A stretch of DNA of 63,563 nucleotides, counting the filler, from Octopus bimaculoides (taxonomy: Eukaryota): assembly GCF_001194135.2 (NCBI RefSeq). It is 8 parts of 8 records of this genome, joined end to end, with 100 filler letters (N's around TTAATTAATTAA, not from the genome) between each part and the next. Parts side by side here need not be neighbours in the genome. Positions count along the whole stretch, not along the records: positions 36,274 to 43,039 come from NW_026423641.1; 7 more parts are not named here. One strand, given 5' to 3'. Below, piece after piece: positions 36,274-43,039 of this stretch. Numbering within the stretch: the stretch's first letter is position 1; each line of letters starts with the position of its first letter. The notes under the pieces are model-generated. The model was not told where the DNA came from, ran no database searches, and saw nothing but the letters and a program-made list of their open reading frames with translations. Both the position numbers and the translations under genes were made by a program.

Positions 36274-39200
36274 TCATTTCGTTGGTAAGCTCGTCCATAC
36301 GTACGAATGAGCGAACGAACGAATGAAAGAATGAATGTACGTACGAACGAACGTACGTAAATAGGTACGTACGAACTAACGAACGAATGAACAAACGATC
36401 GAACGAACAAACGAACGAACGAACAAAAGAACGAACGGACGAAACTAACGAAGGAACAAACGAACGAACGAACGAAACAAACGAACGAAAGAATGAATGA
36501 ACGAACGAAAGAACGATCAAACGCACGTATGTACGTACCTACGGACAAAAGAGCGAACGAATGAACAAACTAACGACCGAACGCACATACGTACGAACGA
36601 ACAAACTTATGTGTGTACGTACGTACGAAAGAACGAACGAACGTACGTACGTTCATAAGTAAGTACGTTTGTTCATTAGTTCGTTCGTACATACGTACGT
36701 TCAATTCTATGTTCGTTCAATCATTCGTACGTACGTTTGTCCGTTTCTTTGTTCGTTCGTTTGTTCGATCGTTCTTACATACGTACGTAAATCCGTACAT
36801 TCGTACGGACGTTCGTTCGTTAGTTCTTTCGTACGTACGTACGTTCGTTCATTAGGTCATTCGTACGTACGTTCGTTCGTTCATTTATATATATGTACGT
36901 AGGAACATACGTACGTTCATTCGTTCGTAATTACGTTCCTTCTTTCGTTTATTCGTTCGTACGTACGAACTTACTTACGTACTCACGTTTTTCCTTCCTT
37001 CGATCATTTATTCATACGTACGATCGTTCGTTCGTATGTACATACGATCGTTCTTACGTACGTACGTACGTTCGTTCGTACGTACGTACATTCATTCGTT
37101 CGTTCGTACGTATGTACGTTCGTTCATTGATAAATATGTAAGTACGAATATACGTACGTTCGTTCGTTGTCTNNNNNNNNNNNNNNNNNNNNNNNNNNNN
37201 NNNNNNNNNNNNNNNNNNNNNNNNNNNNNNNNNNNNNNNNNNNNNNNNNNNNNNNNNNNNNNNNNNNNNNNNNNNNNNNNNNNNNNNNNNNNNNNNNNNN
37301 NNNNNNNNNNNNNNNNNNNNNNNNNNNNNNNNNNNNNNNNNNNNNNNNNNNNNNNNNNNNNNNNNNNNNNNNNNNNNNNNNNNNNNNNNNNNNNNNNNNN
37401 NNNNNNNNNNNNNNNNNNNNNNNNNNNNNNNNNNNNNNNNNNNNNNNNNNNNNNNNNNNNNNNNNNNNNNNNNNNNNNNNNNNNNNNNNNNNNNNNNNNN
37501 NNNNNNNNNNNNNNNNNNNNNNNNNNNNNNNNNNNNNNNNNNNNNNNNNNNNNNNNNNNNNNNNNNNNNNNNNNNNNNNNNNNNNNNNNNNNNNNNNNNN
37601 NNNNNNNNNNNNNNNNNNNNNNNNNNNNNNNNNNNNNNNNNNNNNNNNNNNNNNNNNNNNNNNNNNNNNNNNNNNNNNNNNNNNNNNNNNNNNNNNNNNN
37701 NNNNNNNNNNNNNNNNNNNNNNNNNNNNNNNNNNNNNNNNNNNNNNNNNNNNNNNNNNNNNNNNNNNNNNNNNNNNNNNNNNNNNNNNNNNNNNNNNNNN
37801 NNNNNNNNNNNNNNNNNNNNNNNNNNNNGAACGAACTAACGCACGAACAAACGAAAGAACGTATATTCGTACTTACATATGCATGAATGAACGAACAAAC
37901 GAATGAACGTGCGTATGTTCGTACGTACATATGTATGAATGAACGAACGAACGTACGTACGTACGCACGAACGATCGTACGTATGAACAAATGATCGAAG
38001 GAAGGAAAGAACGAACGAACGAACGAACGTACGTATGTACGGATTTACGTATGTAAGAACGAACGAACGATCGAACAAAGAAACAGACGAACGTACGTAC
38101 GAACAAAAGAACGAACGAACGTACGTAGGTACGAAAAAAAACTAACGAACAAAGAATTGAACGTACGTATGTACGAAGGAACAAACGAACGTACATAAAT
38201 AGGTACATATGTACGTACGTACGTATGAACGAACGAAAAAACTAACGAACGTACGTACGAACGAACGAAAGAACGTACGAACGAACGTACGAACGATTGA
38301 ACGAAAGAATGTACGTACGTACGAACGAACAAACGTACGTGCGAAGGAACGAACAAACGAATGATCGTACGTACGTACGGAAGAACGAAACAAACGATCG
38401 AACGAAACAAACGAACATACGTACGAACAAACGTACGTATATAAGTACCTACGTACGAACGAACGTAAATACGTCCGTACGTACATAACAACGAAGGAAC
38501 GAATGTACGTACGTAGGAACGAACGTACGTACGAAACATGAAAGAACGTAAGAACGAACGAACGAAAGAAGGAACAAACGAATTTACGAACAAATGTAGG
38601 TACATACGAACAAGCGTAACTACGACGGAACAAACGAACGAACGTACGTAGGAACGAACAAACGAATGAAAGTACGTACGAACGAAGGAGCGAGCGAAAG
38701 ATTGTAAGAACGAACGTACATACGAAAAAAAAAAACGAACGAACAAAGAAATGAACGTACGATCGAAAGTACGAACGATGGAACGTAGGTATGTATGTAC
38801 GTACGAAGGACCGAACGAACGTACGTAAGTAGGTACATATGTACGTACGAACGAACGAACAAAGTAACGAACGTACGCGCGTTCGTACGGTCGGTCATTC
38901 TTACGCACGTACGTAAGTTCGTTCGTATTTAGTAACGTACGTCCGTTCGTTCGTTGGATCGTTCGTACGTACTTACTTATGAACGTACGTACGCACATCC
39001 GTTCGTTCGGTCGTTAATTTGTTCATTCGTTCGCTCTTTTGTCCGTAGATAGGTACGTACGTACATTAATTCATTCGTACGTACGTGCGTTTGATCGTTC
39101 TTTCGTCTGTTCATTCGTACGTACGTTCGTTCGTTCGCTCGTTTGTTCGTTCATTTGTTTGTTTCGTTCGTTCGTTTGTTCGTTCGTACGTTCGTTCATA

Positions 39201-42045
39201 CGTATATACATAAGTAAATACGTACGTTCGATCGTTCGTTCATTTCGTTGGTATGCTCGTACGTACGTACGAATGAGCGAACGAACGAACAAACGAAAGA
39301 AGGAACGAACGTACGTATATTCGTACTTACATATGTATGAATGAATGAACGAACGAACGAGCGTGCGTATGTTCGTACGTACATATGTATGAATGAACGA
39401 ACGGACGGACGAAGGAACGCATGAAACGAACGAACGTACGTACGAAAGAACTAACGAACGAGGCAACGAACGAACGTCCGTACGTATGTACAGATTTACG
39501 TATGTAAGAACGAACGAATGTAGGTACGAGAAAAAAACGAACGAACAAAGAATTGAACGTACGTATGTACGAACGAACTAACGAACAAACGAACGTACAT
39601 AAATAGGTACATATGTACGTACGTACGTATGAACGAACGAACAAACTAACGAACGAACGTACGAAAGAATGAACGAACGATTGAACGAAAGAATGTACGT
39701 ACGTACGAAAGAACGAACAAACATACGTGCGAAGGAACGAACGAATGATCGTACGTACGTACGGAAGAACGAACGAACGGTCGAACAAAACAAACAAGCG
39801 AATGAACGAACGAGCGAAAGAACTTACGTATGTACGAACAAACCAAGGAACGAATGAACAAACAAACGTACGTAGGAACGAACGCATGTGCGAACGAAAG
39901 AGAGATCGAACGAAAAAACAAACGAACGTACGTACATACATCCGTACGTAGGAACGAGCGAAGGAAAGTACGAACGAAAGAACTAACGTACGTCCGTACG
40001 TACTAGGGAACAAACGAAAGAACGATTGAACGTATGTAGGTACGAACGAAGTAACGAATGAACGTACGTAGTTAGGTACGTAGGAACGAACGAACGTACG
40101 TAAGTACGAATGAACGAAGGTACGAACGAACGAAAGAAAGAACGTAAGTACGAACGTATGTTCCTACGTACATATATATGGATAAACGAACGAAGGAACG
40201 AATGAAACGAACGTACGTAAGGAAGAACTAATGAACGAACGTCCTTACGTATGTACGGATTTGCGTACGTAAGTACGTATGTAAGAACGAACGAACGATC
40301 GAACAAGCGAACGAACAAAGAAACGGACGAACGTACGTAGGTACGAAAAAAAAACCAACGAACAAAGAATTGAACGTACGTATGTACGAACGAACTAACG
40401 AACAAACGTACTTACTTATGAACGTACGTACGTTCATTCGTTCTATTGTTCGTTATTTCTTTCGTACGTACGTGCGTTCGGTTGTCCTTTCGTTCGGTCG
40501 TTAGTTTGTTCATTCGTTCGCTCTTTTGTCCGTAGGTACGTACGTACATTAATTCATTCGTACGTACATATGTGCTTACATACGTACGTGCGTTCGATCG
40601 TTCGTTCGTTCTTTCGTTAGTTTGTTCGTACGTACGTTCGTTCGTTCACTCGTCTGTTTGTTCTTTCGTTCGTTCGTTCATTCTTCCGTTCGTTCGTTCG
40701 TTTCTTCGTTAGTTTCGTACGTTCTGTCGTACGTACGTTCGTTCATTTGTTCCTTCTTTCGATCGTTTGTTCGTACATACGTACGTTCGTTAGTTCGTAC
40801 GTTCATTCATTCATACGTATATACATATGTAAATACGTACGTTCGATCGTTCGTTCGTTCATTTCGTTGGTAAGCTCGTACGTACGTACCAATGAGCGAA
40901 CGAACGATATGAACGAACGAACGTATATTCGTACTTACATATGTATGAATGTACGAGCGTGCGTATGTTCGTACGTACATATGTATGAATGAACGAACGA
41001 ACGTAAGTAAGTTCGTACGTACGAACGAATAAACGAAAGAAGGAACGTAATTACGAACGAACGGAAGAACGAACGTACCCATATTCCTACGTACATATAT
41101 ATGAATGAACGAACGAACGAACGTAAGTATGTATGTACGTACAAAGGACCGAACGAACGTATGTAAGTAGGTACATATGTTCGTACGAACGAACGAACAA
41201 AGTAACGAACGTACGCACGTTCGGTCTTTCGTTCGTTGGATCGTTCGTACGTACTTACTTATGAACGTTCATTCGTTCGTTCGTTCTTTCGTACGTACGC
41301 ACATCCGTTCGTTCGTTCGTTAATTTGTTCGTTCGCTCGGTCGTTACTTTGTCCATTCGTTCGCTCTTTTGTCCGTAGGTACGTACGTACGTACATTAAT
41401 TCATTCGTACGTACCTACGTACGTATGTGATTACGTACATGCGTCTGATCGTTCTTTCGTTTGTTCATTCGTCCGTTTGTTTGTACGTACGTTCGTTCGC
41501 TCCTTTGTTCTTTCGTTCGTTCGTTCATTCTTCCGTTCGTTTGTTCCTTCGTTAGTTTCGTACGTTCGTTCTTTTGTTCTTTTGTTCGTTCTTTCGTTCG
41601 TTCTTTCGTTTGATCGTTGGTTAGTTCGTACGTACGTTCGTTTGTTCGTTCGTTCGTACTTACGTACGTACTTTCGTTTGTTCGTATGTACGTACGTTCG
41701 ATCTTTCGTTCGTTAATTTCGTTGGTAAGCTCGTTCGTACGTACGTACGAATGAGCGAACGAACGATATGAACAAACTAACGAACGAACGTACGTACGTA
41801 TATTCGTACTTACATTCGTTCGTTCGTACATTCGTACGTACGAAAAAATGATCGAAGGAAGGAAAGAACGTGCGTACGTACAAACGAATAAACGAAAGAA
41901 GGAACGTAATTACGAACGAAAGAAAGAACGAACGTACGTATGTTCCTACGTACATATAAATGAATGAACGAACGAACGATCGTACGTACGTACGTACGAA
42001 CGAACGTACGGACGGACGAATGAACGAATAAAACGAACGAATAAA
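36274..42045. repeat. Complex CGAA/CGTA tetranucleotide-derived higher-order satellite with alternating strand polarity
   Basis: Blocks of (CGAA)-type alternate with (TTCG)-type, interspersed with (CGTA)n; junction ATTTCGTTGGTA(A/T)GCTCGT recurs at ~36275, 39241, 40860, 41715; gap at 37173-37829. Confidence 0.95.
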
Positions 42046-42119
42046 CTCATATTTATTTATATATATATATTTATTAATATATGTATATATTTATATATTT
42101 ATTCATACATATTTCTTTC

Positions 42120-42312
42120 ATATCTCTTTTACTCTTTTATTTGTTTCAGTCATTTGACTGCGGCCATGCTGGAGCACCGCCTTTAGTCGAGAAAATCAAC
42201 CCAAGGACTTATTCTTTCTAAGCCTAGTACTTATTCTATCGGTCTTTTTGCCAAACCGTTATTATTTATATATATATATATATATATATATTTATTTATT
42301 TATCTATTTATT

Positions 42313-42345
<33 letters not shown>

Positions 42346-42635
42346 ATTTATATATATATATTTTTTATATATATTTTTGTTTATATTTCTTTATATATAT
42401 ATATTTATTTATATATATTTATGTATATATTTCCTTATATATATATATTTCTTTATATATATATATTTATTGATATATATATACATTTATTTATATATAT
42501 TTATTTATATATATGTATATTTATTTATATATATTTATTTATTTATATATATTTATTTCTATATATATTTATTTGTATACATTTATTGATATATATATAT
42601 TTTTAATATATATTTATTTATATATTTATATTTAG

Positions 42636-42671
<36 letters not shown>

Positions 42672-42987
42672 TCATTTATATATATATATTTATTTATATA
42701 TATATCTATTTATTAAATTTATTTAAGTATATTTATTTATATATATTTGTTTATTTATATATATATTTATATTTATTTATATATATATATTTATTTATAT
42801 TTATTGATATATATTTATTGATATATATTTATTTATATATATATATATATTTATATATATATCCCTTTATATATATATATATTTATTTATATATATATAT
42901 ATATATATTTATTTATATATATTTATTTATATATATTTATTTAAATATATTTATTTATATATATGTATTTATTTGTATATATTCATC

Positions 42988-43021
<34 letters not shown>

Positions 43022-43039
43022 CCTTTATATATATATATA
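42120..43039 (-). repeat. SINE family A tail followed by ~770 bp of TA/TTTA-derived complex repeat
   Basis: Tail reverse motif CAGTCATTTGACTGCGGCCATGCTGGAGCACCGCC at ~42148-42182; from ~42265 the sequence is almost purely A/T. Confidence 0.85.

What the first reader, a model, noticed from the sequence alone, without database searches (positions are those of the whole stretch)
36274..42045. Polarity-switching CGAA/CGTA higher-order satellite punctuated by a conserved hairpin junction
Seen: each unit runs junction -> CGAA-strand block -> TTCG-strand block -> junction. The junction is a non-tetramer spacer (TTGGTAAGCTCGTACGTACGTA) between inverted arms (CGTTCGTTCATTTCG / CGAATGAGCGAACG) at ~36275, 39241, 40860, 41715. 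Unit lengths vary (1619 and 855 bp measured). Diagnostic motifs recur in the same order (GTATATTCGTACTTACAT at 37861, 39315, 40923, 41798; GTACTTACTTATGAACGT at ~38969, 40408, 41251; CTCTTTTGTCCGTAG at ~39034, 40522, 41364). This is not simple slippage: units were duplicated at kb scale. Inference: an undescribed fold-back satellite, or a foldback-like mobile unit; possibly structural (centromeric or subtelomeric).
Basis: partly seen in the sequence, partly recalled or inferred. Interest (0 to 1): 0.75.

Follow-up and report, generated by a model that had tools for sequence, protein, structure and literature searches.

The report
Tetramer satellite with conserved orientation switches
This is a non-coding tandem repeat (satellite DNA) built from the four-letter units CGAA and CGTA, whose 0.9-1.6 kb units each flip strand at two conserved points; the architecture is real in the assembled sequence, but it belongs to a known kind of repeat and could not be checked against reads.

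Summary
All motifs sit at the stated coordinates. Unit-to-unit homology reaches 252 bits, against at most 60 bits in 100 tetramer-preserving shuffles.

Three corrections:
- The "non-tetramer spacer" is three mutated in-phase tetramers (TTGG TAAG CTCG) followed by (TACG)3. Both kinds of strand switch therefore lie in short runs of the self-complementary tetramer ACGT.
- The first unit (about 36390-37172) is an inverted copy. It carries the three landmark motifs in reverse-complement order.
- The N gap lies on the axis of a palindrome. Its two flanks are mirror images, 89-92% identical at matching distances from the gap.

Best reading: a higher-order-repeat satellite derived from a compound (AACG)n/(ACGT)n microsatellite. 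It has two ancestral orientation switches per unit (J and S). The unit was amplified in tandem with length changes, and one unit later inverted. It is non-coding, and nothing points to a mobile element.

Closest known cases are the Tribolium satellites with "macro-dyad symmetries" and conserved inversion sites, and the strand switches in human HSat3.

Copy number, chromosomal location and assembly fidelity could not be tested. Interest is modest.

The parts
36274..36317 (+). Junction J0, cut at the piece's left edge. It holds the end of the T-arm, the spacer at 36282-36303 (2 mismatches) and the A-arm CGAATGAGCGAACG at 36304.
   Evidence: 94% identical to J1 and J2 over 50 nt
36390..37172 (-). 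Unit U0, an inverted copy of a type-2 unit. It carries rc(m3) at 36539, rc(m2) at 36649, the inverted S switch at about 36634-36713, and rc(m1) at 37136. The inversion breakpoint lies somewhere in 36325-36390.
   Evidence: 36634-36713 matches rc(40361-40440) at 96% over 80 nt; 36914-36974 matches rc(41001-41061) at 100% over 61 nt.
37173..37828 (.). Assembly gap (N, estimated length) lying on the axis of a palindrome formed by U0 and U1.
   Evidence: 37164..37118 mirrors 37850..37896 (89%) at 8 and 21 nt from the gap edges; 37053..36990 mirrors 37945..38008 (92%) at 119 and 116 nt.
37829..38871 (+). U1 CGAA-polarity block, at least 1043 nt with its start lost in the gap. m1 is at 37861.
38860..38890 (+). 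S1, the A-to-T orientation switch of type 1: GAAC GTAC GCGC GTTC.
   Evidence: 38771-38885 is 94% identical to 41109-41223
38872..39232 (+). U1 TTCG-polarity block, with m2 at 38969 and m3 at 39034.
39233..39283 (+). Junction J1, the T-to-A switch: T-arm, TTGG TATG CTCG, (TACG)3, A-arm.
39284..40420 (+). U2 CGAA-polarity block with m1 at 39315. Its end (40327-40408) is a 95% copy of 39510-39591 joined directly to m2.
40396..40440 (+). S2, the A-to-T switch of type 2: m2 followed by the perfect 20-nt palindrome ATGAACGTACGTACGTTCAT.
   Evidence: (hairpin z = -7.0)
40421..40851 (+). U2 TTCG-polarity block with m3 at 40521.
40852..40902 (+). Junction J2, which carries the exact spacer.
40903..41217 (+). 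U3 CGAA-polarity block. It is the short form and lacks about 0.8 kb of the middle of the U1/U2 block. m1 is at 40923.
41200..41230 (+). S3, the A-to-T switch of type 1: GAAC GTAC GCAC GTTC.
41218..41706 (+). U3 TTCG-polarity block, with m2 at 41251 and m3 at 41364.
41707..41761 (+). Junction J3. Its spacer carries a 4-nt (one tetramer) insertion.
41762..42045 (+). U4, a truncated CGAA-polarity block with m1 at 41798. The array ends here against AT-rich simple sequence.
   Evidence: 40489-41139 is about 80% identical to 41332-41998 over 679 columns

Best explanation
**What it is.** A non-coding satellite with higher-order-repeat structure that grew out of a compound tetranucleotide microsatellite, (AACG)n mixed with the self-complementary (ACGT)n.

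**Unit structure.** One ancestral unit had the order: CGAA-polarity block, switch S, TTCG-polarity block, switch J. Both switches sit in 2-3 copies of ACGT. There the two strands read alike, so a hairpin or fold-back can form, and a template switch or inverted duplication keeps the 4-nt register.

**Later history.**
- The whole unit was copied in tandem at least 4-5 times, probably by unequal exchange between the internally repetitive blocks. This explains the unit-length variation of 855, 1619 and at least 1400 bp.
- A secondary deletion or duplication created a second type of S junction, shared by U0 and U2.
- One unit (U0) was flipped, most simply by recombination between the mutually inverted arms of two junctions. 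This created the palindrome whose axis the assembler could not cross, which is the N gap.

**Function.** I commit to no cellular function beyond being repetitive, probably heterochromatic, DNA. Its hairpin and cruciform potential promotes its own rearrangement.

**Shown versus inferred.** Shown: the tetramer phase, the conserved switches, unit homology above chance, the inverted unit, the mirror-image gap flanks and the absence of coding signal. Inferred: the order of events, the fold-back and recombination mechanisms, and the heterochromatic, high-copy status.
For: - **Tetramer backbone.** 95% of bases lie in CpG-to-CpG intervals that are multiples of 4, with only 24 phase breaks in 5 kb. In-phase tetramers are CGAA 29%, CGTA 21%, and the CpG-loss variants TGAA, CAAA, TGTA and CATA 18%.
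- **Unit homology.** Copies are 80-95% identical over 80-680 nt, far above tetramer-shuffle controls.
- **Conserved junction.** Four J copies share the same three mutated tetramers plus (TACG)3.
- **Conserved switches of two types.** S copies share m2 and m3. S1 matches S3 at 94% over 115 nt, and S0rc matches S2 at 96% over 80 nt.
- **Position of the switches.** All switch points read GAAC-GTAC-G(TA/CG/CA)C-GTTC or TTCG-(TACG)3-AACG.
- **Old palindrome at J.** The T-side sequence CATACGTATATACATAAGTAAATACGTACG mirrors the m1 region on the A side. Arm scores are 34-45, against 14-16 ± 2-3 in shuffles.
- **Inverted unit.** U0 is inverted and the gap flanks are mirror images.
- **No coding or RNA signal.** ORFs are (FVRS)n/(TNER)n low complexity with no Pfam hit. 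No Rfam match reaches half its gathering score, and there is no tRNA.
- **Precedent.** The same architecture exists in Tribolium satellites and in human HSat3 and beta satellite.
Against: - Everything rests on one 6.8-kb scaffold with an internal gap, and no reads could be examined. A satellite assembled from short reads can be a chimeric consensus, so unit order, unit lengths and the placement of U0 may be unreliable.
- Specific inverted homology between the A and T blocks is weak: about 75% identity over about 70-100 nt at J, and 63.9 bits against a shuffle maximum of 60 in the global test. The primary switches could therefore have arisen without any inversion.
- Copy number and array size are unknown. 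The array could be a single local oddity rather than a satellite family.
- CpG columns changed only modestly more than other columns between copies, 12.5% against 8.5%. Nothing can be said about methylation or heterochromatin.
Confidence: 0.65

Rival explanations
1. Assembly or scaffolding artefact. A long, simpler (CGAA/CGTA)n satellite was collapsed and mis-joined by a short-read assembler. The strand alternation, unit lengths or the inverted first contig would then not exist as such in the genome.
For: - The piece is a short scaffold made entirely of repeats, with an N gap of estimated size exactly on a palindrome axis.
- Units share exact stretches of 30-61 nt, long enough to mislead a k-mer graph.
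Against: - The switch sequences are asymmetric and specific. They are not pure palindromes at which a graph path could flip.
- They recur in 4 diverged copies that differ by substitutions, at 80-95% identity. An artefact that reuses the same reads would give near-identical arms.
- Whichever way the first contig is oriented, it contains a junction and a unit body in opposite orientations inside contiguous sequence.
Confidence: 0.15
2. Polarity blocks arose without inversions. The ancestor was a strand-symmetric (ACGT)n microsatellite. AACG and its complement CGTT (read as TTCG in the array's phase) are the same single-base change made on opposite strands. Each variant was then expanded locally by slippage, producing alternating polarity. 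Only U0 would be a true inversion.
For: - In the NNCG phase the switches read TTCG > TACG > AACG with the phase kept.
- ACGT makes up 19-21% of the array and is interspersed everywhere.
- Within U1-U4 the A and T blocks share no inverted homology above the tetramer-shuffle maximum.
Against: - The AT-rich, non-tetramer landmark on both sides of J is mirrored at similar distances, 36-66 nt to the left and 45-78 nt to the right. Arm scores exceed all shuffles.
- S2 has a mirrored order of rare variants around a perfect 20-nt palindrome: TAAC, then GAAC GAAC, then a GTAC run.
Confidence: 0.2
3. Foldback-like or MITE-like mobile element. Each unit would be an element with long terminal inverted repeats made of short tandem repeats, as in Drosophila FB elements, here inserted or amplified in tandem.
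For: - Each unit has two arms of opposite polarity built of short tandem repeats, and it snaps back into one long hairpin of -202 kcal/mol.
- Conserved sequences lie at the arm boundaries.
Against: - Units are joined head to tail through a conserved junction that is itself in-phase tetramers. No target-site duplication or defined terminus is present.
- The one visible array end (42045) falls inside a block.
- The arms are not copies of each other.
- There is no transposase-like ORF.
- No dispersed copy turned up in any collection searched. Those collections are microbial or viral, so this point is weak.
Confidence: 0.05
4. A functional dyad-symmetric satellite. The alternation and its conserved inversion points would be maintained because non-B DNA (hairpins or cruciforms) or hairpin transcripts help specify (peri)centromeric chromatin, as proposed for Tribolium macro-dyad symmetries.
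For: - J and S are better conserved than their surroundings. There are 49 consecutive invariant or near-invariant columns across 4 J copies, against 72% mean column identity.
- Fold-back potential is strong.
- There is a precedent and a published hypothesis in PMC13081366.
Against: - Conservation of J and S is equally expected from recent common descent of the copies.
- No location, chromatin, transcription or cross-species data are available.
- The array seen here is only about 5.8 kb.
Confidence: 0.1

Closest known systems
Tribolium satellite DNAs with macro-dyad symmetries (TmSat1/TmSat2 of T. madens; also T. freemani and T. castaneum). PMC13081366, read.
   Same: - Tandem arrays change monomer orientation inside the array and so form inverted sub-arrays.
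- The inversion sites are conserved in sequence.
- The number of repeats between fixed points varies.
- Both can form long hairpins or cruciforms.
   Different: - The Tribolium monomers are about 110-700 bp and the sub-arrays span kilobases to tens of kilobases. Here the monomer is a tetranucleotide and the sub-arrays are 0.3-1.2 kb.
- The switches here sit in a self-complementary variant of the monomer itself.
- There is no sequence relationship between the two.
- Genomic abundance and (peri)centromeric location are shown for Tribolium and unknown here.
Human satellite 3 and beta satellite arrays (T2T-CHM13). bioRxiv 10.1101/2021.07.12.452052, read.
   Same: - HSat3 is likewise a satellite derived from a simple-sequence repeat, with higher-order structure.
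[quoted passage not shown]
   Different: - The HSat3 motif is the pentamer CATTC, which is not self-complementary.
- Its strand switches are scattered rearrangements in megabase arrays. They are not two fixed switches in every repeat unit.
Drosophila foldback (FB) transposons (from general knowledge, not tested here).
   Same: Long inverted arms composed of short tandem sub-repeats, and snap-back behaviour of the single strand.
   Different: - FB elements are dispersed insertions with defined ends and target-site duplications.
- Their two arms are copies of each other.
- None of these features is seen here.
Tetranucleotide-based crustacean satellites with interspersed "punctuation" sequences, such as the hermit crab (TAGG)n satellites
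   Same: A satellite whose bulk is a 4-nt simple repeat, interrupted at intervals by conserved non-consensus sequences that define a longer period.
   Different: As far as I recall, no regular strand alternation is reported for them. The motif is different and the organism here is unknown.

Membership tests
Satellite DNA with higher-order repeat (HOR) structure | Head-to-tail tandem repetition of a long unit that is itself made of short monomers | tested here: met
   Four junction copies lie on the same strand at spacings of 1619 and 855 bp, and the landmarks m1, m2 and m3 recur in the same order.
Satellite DNA with higher-order repeat (HOR) structure | Similarity between long units exceeds what the monomer composition alone gives | tested here: met
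   Scores are 252, 240 and 188 bits, against a maximum of 58 in 100 tetramer shuffles.
Satellite DNA with higher-order repeat (HOR) structure | High copy number or long arrays in the genome | not testable with these tools
No relatives turned up in the metagenome, viral or prokaryote collections.
Satellite DNA with higher-order repeat (HOR) structure | No protein-coding or structured-RNA gene content | tested here: met
   ORFs are low-complexity translations of the repeat, with no Pfam hit. Rfam matches are all far below the gathering scores, and there is no tRNA.
Dyad-symmetric satellites (Tribolium type) | Sub-arrays of opposite monomer orientation within one array | tested here: met
   AT skew and tetramer polarity alternate at least 9 times.
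Dyad-symmetric satellites (Tribolium type) | Inversion sites conserved in sequence across the array or genome | tested here: met
   The 4 J copies and 4 S copies are alignable, with long invariant runs. This was tested within this array only, not genome-wide.
Dyad-symmetric satellites (Tribolium type) | Multi-kilobase symmetric arms; (peri)centromeric, megabase-scale distribution | not testable with these tools
   Arms here are 0.3-1.2 kb. No chromosome context or reads are available.
Foldback (FB-like) transposon | The two arms are inverted copies of one another | tested here: not met
   Within U1-U4 the best inverted HSP scores 63.9 bits, about the shuffle maximum of 60. Only an old mirror image of about 70-100 nt at about 75% identity surrounds J.
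Foldback (FB-like) transposon | Defined termini with a target-site duplication; dispersed copies | tested here: inconclusive
   The right array end (42045) falls inside a block and has no terminal motif. The left end is not in the piece, and dispersed copies could not be searched in the host genome.
Foldback (FB-like) transposon | Some copies carry a transposase gene | tested here: not met
   No ORF has any Pfam domain.

The most novel reading that the evidence does not exclude
Array-level dyad symmetry with conserved inversion points has, according to PMC13081366, been documented only in Tribolium beetles. On this reading it also exists in an unrelated animal lineage. Here it would be seeded by a self-complementary tetranucleotide, (ACGT)n, that acts as a built-in inversion hotspot. 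The alternating-strand unit would be maintained because its hairpin or cruciform DNA, or hairpin RNA, contributes to (peri)centromeric or heterochromatic chromatin.
Probability: 0.1. Interest if true: 0.6.

Novelty: new member of a known kind. Interest (0 to 1): 0.3.

Why it matters
If long reads confirm the array, it is a compact and easily analysed example of how a microsatellite becomes a complex satellite.

- A self-complementary motif variant (ACGT) inside an asymmetric repeat (AACG) offers in-register sites for strand switching.
- Those switches then become fixed landmarks of a higher-order unit.
- It would also extend the "dyad-symmetric satellite" architecture beyond Tribolium, which bears on the idea that repeat organisation and non-B DNA matter more than primary sequence in satellite-rich chromatin.

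On the practical side, the locus shows why assemblies break at such repeats: the gap sits on a palindrome axis.

If the array proves to be a single short locus or an assembly chimera, it has no wider importance.

Tried and rejected
1. **Reads.** I did not try to get round this.
2. **Relatives by DNA pattern.**
   - The junction 22-mer gave 0 hits in metagenome contigs and viral contigs. Its single hit in genome contigs (L001, a Sulfurovaceae MAG contig) is ordinary coding DNA that shares only 22-24 nt, which is a chance match.
   - The m1 20-mer gave 0 hits in viral contigs.
   - The 20-mer from the SINE-like flank gave 0 viral hits and 31 metagenome hits. All 31 match only over the pattern itself.
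3. **Relatives by protein.**
   - Two repeat-derived ORFs are not on record as called genes.
   - A homologue search with the junction-spanning ORF returned only unrelated low-complexity (TNER)n/(FVRS)n proteins. None carries the junction signature RAYQRNE.
4. **Literature by sequence string.** Searches returned nothing relevant. Searches for AACG/ACGT microsatellites in cephalopods or molluscs also returned nothing useful.
5. **Rfam.** The only matches are microRNA-hairpin look-alikes at 19-37 bits, against gathering scores of 55-140. I rejected them as palindrome noise.
6. **CpG decay as a methylation signal.** The excess between copies is only modest, 12.5% against 8.5%, so I drew no conclusion.
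7. **Organism.** From memory, the flank at 42140-42262 resembles an octopus SINE. I could not test this and have not relied on it.

Full report
**What is there.** The piece 36274-43039 has three parts:
- a 5.8-kb repeat (36274-42045), interrupted by an N gap at 37173-37828;
- about 95 nt of AT-rich simple sequence and a unique stretch of about 120 nt (42140-42262);
- a (TA)n/(TTTA)n microsatellite running to the end of the piece.

The repeat is built almost entirely of phased tetramers. When every block is oriented to its A-rich strand, 95% of bases lie in CpG-to-CpG intervals that are multiples of four, and there are only 24 phase breaks. In-phase tetramers are CGAA (29%), CGTA (21%) and mostly single-base derivatives. 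The CpG-loss forms TGAA, CAAA, TGTA and CATA together make 18%. CpG is 3.3 times more frequent than expected.

**Check of the observation.**
- The junction spacer is at 36282, 39248, 40867 and 41722, all on the + strand, with 0-2 mismatches and no matches expected by chance.
- Junction spacings are 1619 and 855 bp.
- m1, m2 and m3 are exact at the stated places.
- AT skew alternates between about +0.5 and -0.5 in each unit.

I tested the claim that this is more than slippage with a null that shuffles the tetramers inside each polarity block. Observed off-diagonal self-alignments reach 252, 240 and 188 bits on the plus strand and 186 and 143 on the minus strand. There are 31 and 26 HSPs of at least 60 bits. 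In 100 shuffles the maxima were 58 and 60 bits. The kilobase-scale unit is therefore real in this sequence.

**Three corrections.**

1. *The junction is not a non-tetramer spacer.* In the NNCG phase it reads TTCG TTCA (one extra T) TTCG TTGG TAAG CTCG TACG TACG TACG AATG AGCG AACG. TTGG, TAAG and CTCG are one-base derivatives of TTCG, TACG and TTCG, and the phase runs straight through (phase statistics). The real T-to-A switch lies in (TACG)3.
   - The A-to-T switches read GAAC GTAC G(TA/CG/CA)C GTTC. In unit 2 this forms the perfect 20-nt palindrome ATGAACGTACGTACGTTCAT.
   - Both kinds of switch therefore sit in a short run of the self-complementary tetramer ACGT.
   - The "inverted arms" are largely the automatic result of a TTCG block meeting a CGAA block.

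2. *The first unit is inverted.* m3, m2 and m1 occur once each in reverse complement, at 36539, 36649 and 37136.
   - 80-nt windows from about 36390 to 37172 all match units 1-4 best on the minus strand, in places at 96-100% identity. Windows in 36274-36350 match on the plus strand.
   - The junction J0 and the body of U0 thus have opposite orientations within contiguous sequence. This stays true whichever way the contig is placed in the scaffold.

3. *The gap.* I tested the flanks.
   - They are not a collinear continuation. They are mirror images at matching distances from the gap edges: 37164..37118 against 37850..37896 (89%, at 8 and 21 nt), and 37053..36990 against 37945..38008 (92%, at 119 and 116 nt).
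   - The gap therefore sits on the axis of a palindrome formed by inverted U0 and direct U1. This is a plausible reason for the assembly break.
   - Reading frame is irrelevant because nothing here codes.
   - True continuity and gap length cannot be established without reads.

**Anatomy of the units.** Each unit runs J, CGAA-polarity block (starting with m1), S, TTCG-polarity block (with m2 and m3), then the next J. The TTCG block is 360-490 nt in the three units that show it whole.

| Unit | CGAA-block length |
|---|---|
| U1 | at least 1043 nt (start lost in the gap) |
| U2 | about 1140 nt |
| U3 | about 315 nt |

- U3 lacks about 0.8 kb of the block middle.
- There are two types of S.
  - Type 1 (U1 and U3; 38771-38885 against 41109-41223, 94%) switches 30-100 nt before m2.
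  - Type 2 (U2 and inverted U0; 96% over 80 nt) joins a copy of an internal A-block segment directly to m2. That segment is 40327-40408, which is 95% identical to 39510-39591.
- Shorter periodicities of 32-64 nt are nested in the block starts.
- The four J copies share 49 nearly invariant columns, against a mean column identity of 72%.

**Fold-back or not?**
- Single strands around every switch fold far better than shuffles, with z from -2 to -7.
- A whole unit folds as one snap-back hairpin at -202 kcal/mol. An equally long one-polarity stretch folds at -125 kcal/mol. This follows from tetramer complementarity.
- Specific inverted homology is weak. Within U1-U4 the best inverted HSP is 63.9 bits, about the shuffle maximum.
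- A focused test of the arms around J does show an old mirror image. The AT-rich landmark left of J (CATACGTATATACATAAGTAAATACGTACG) matches the reverse complement of the m1 region right of J at similar distances. Arm scores are 34-45, against 14-16 ± 2-3 in shuffles.
- Around S2 the order of rare variants is mirrored.
- I conclude that J and S are probably junctions of ancient inverted duplications. An origin without inversion is not excluded, because AACG and CGTT (TTCG in the array's phase) are mirror-image one-base derivatives of palindromic ACGT.

**What it is not.**
- ORFs are translations of the repeat, (FVRS)n or (TNER)n. They have no Pfam domain, no exact gene on record, and only low-complexity look-alikes in the protein search.
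- Rfam gives only sub-threshold microRNA-hairpin look-alikes, and there is no tRNA.
- Nothing indicates a transposon. There is no terminus or duplication at the visible end, and the arms are not copies of each other.

**Relatives elsewhere.** None could be found.
- Pattern scans of the metagenome, viral and prokaryote-genome collections gave nothing or chance matches.
- Full-text searches for sequence strings gave nothing relevant.
- These collections are not the right place to find an animal satellite, so this absence says little.

**Comparison with what is known.**
- The architecture matches satellites with inversely oriented sub-arrays and conserved inversion sites in Tribolium. Those authors state that such macro-dyad symmetries had been documented only in that genus (PMC13081366).
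- It also resembles the many strand switches in human HSat3 and beta-satellite arrays (10.1101/2021.07.12.452052).
- It differs in scale (4-nt monomer, sub-kilobase arms), in having exactly two fixed switches per higher-order unit, and in placing the switches in a self-complementary variant of its own monomer.
- It fails two of the three foldback-transposon features tested, and the third (defined ends and dispersed copies) was inconclusive.
- I file it as a new member of a known kind.

**Verdict.** The repeat is a real, structured, higher-order satellite in the assembled sequence, of ordinary kind but neat architecture. The main uncertainty is assembly fidelity, along with genomic abundance, neither of which could be tested here. 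Interest is 0.3.

Noticed in passing
window 42140-42262: A unique, non-repetitive stretch of about 120 nt (TTTCAGTCATTTGACTGCGGCCATGCTGGAGCACCGCC...GCCAAACCG) lies between AT-rich microsatellites and looks like a truncated SINE or TE fragment. From memory it resembles a cephalopod (octopus) SINE. This could not be tested: there was no match in papers or in the collections, and no tRNA.
   Followed up: partly
window 42046-42139 and 42263-43039: A long (TA)n/(TTTA)n-type microsatellite with 3-5% GC fills the rest of the piece. The satellite ends abruptly against it, inside a CGAA-polarity block.
   Followed up: no
window 37874-38039, 40904-41198, 41904-41996, 36802-36980: There are intermediate periodicities of 40-52 nt, and of 32/64 nt in the inverted unit, at the starts of the CGAA-polarity blocks. 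This is a third level of repetition between the tetramer and the kilobase unit.
   Followed up: partly
window 41816-41840: In the last unit, a patch of about 25-30 nt of TTCG polarity follows m1, where the other units have ATGTATGAATG. It is a small local strand switch or replacement.
   Followed up: no
window 36274-42045: CpG density is extreme: 715 CpG in 5 kb, observed/expected 3.3. CpG-loss variants are the commonest tetramer derivatives. Between unit copies, CpG columns changed 12.5% against 8.5% for other columns, which is only a modest excess.
   Followed up: partly
L001 3239-3262 (MAG Sulfurovaceae contig JAOZOG010000099.1): This is the only public hit to the junction 22-mer. It is a chance match of 22-24 nt inside ordinary prokaryotic or phage-like coding DNA and is unrelated to the satellite.
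   Followed up: yes
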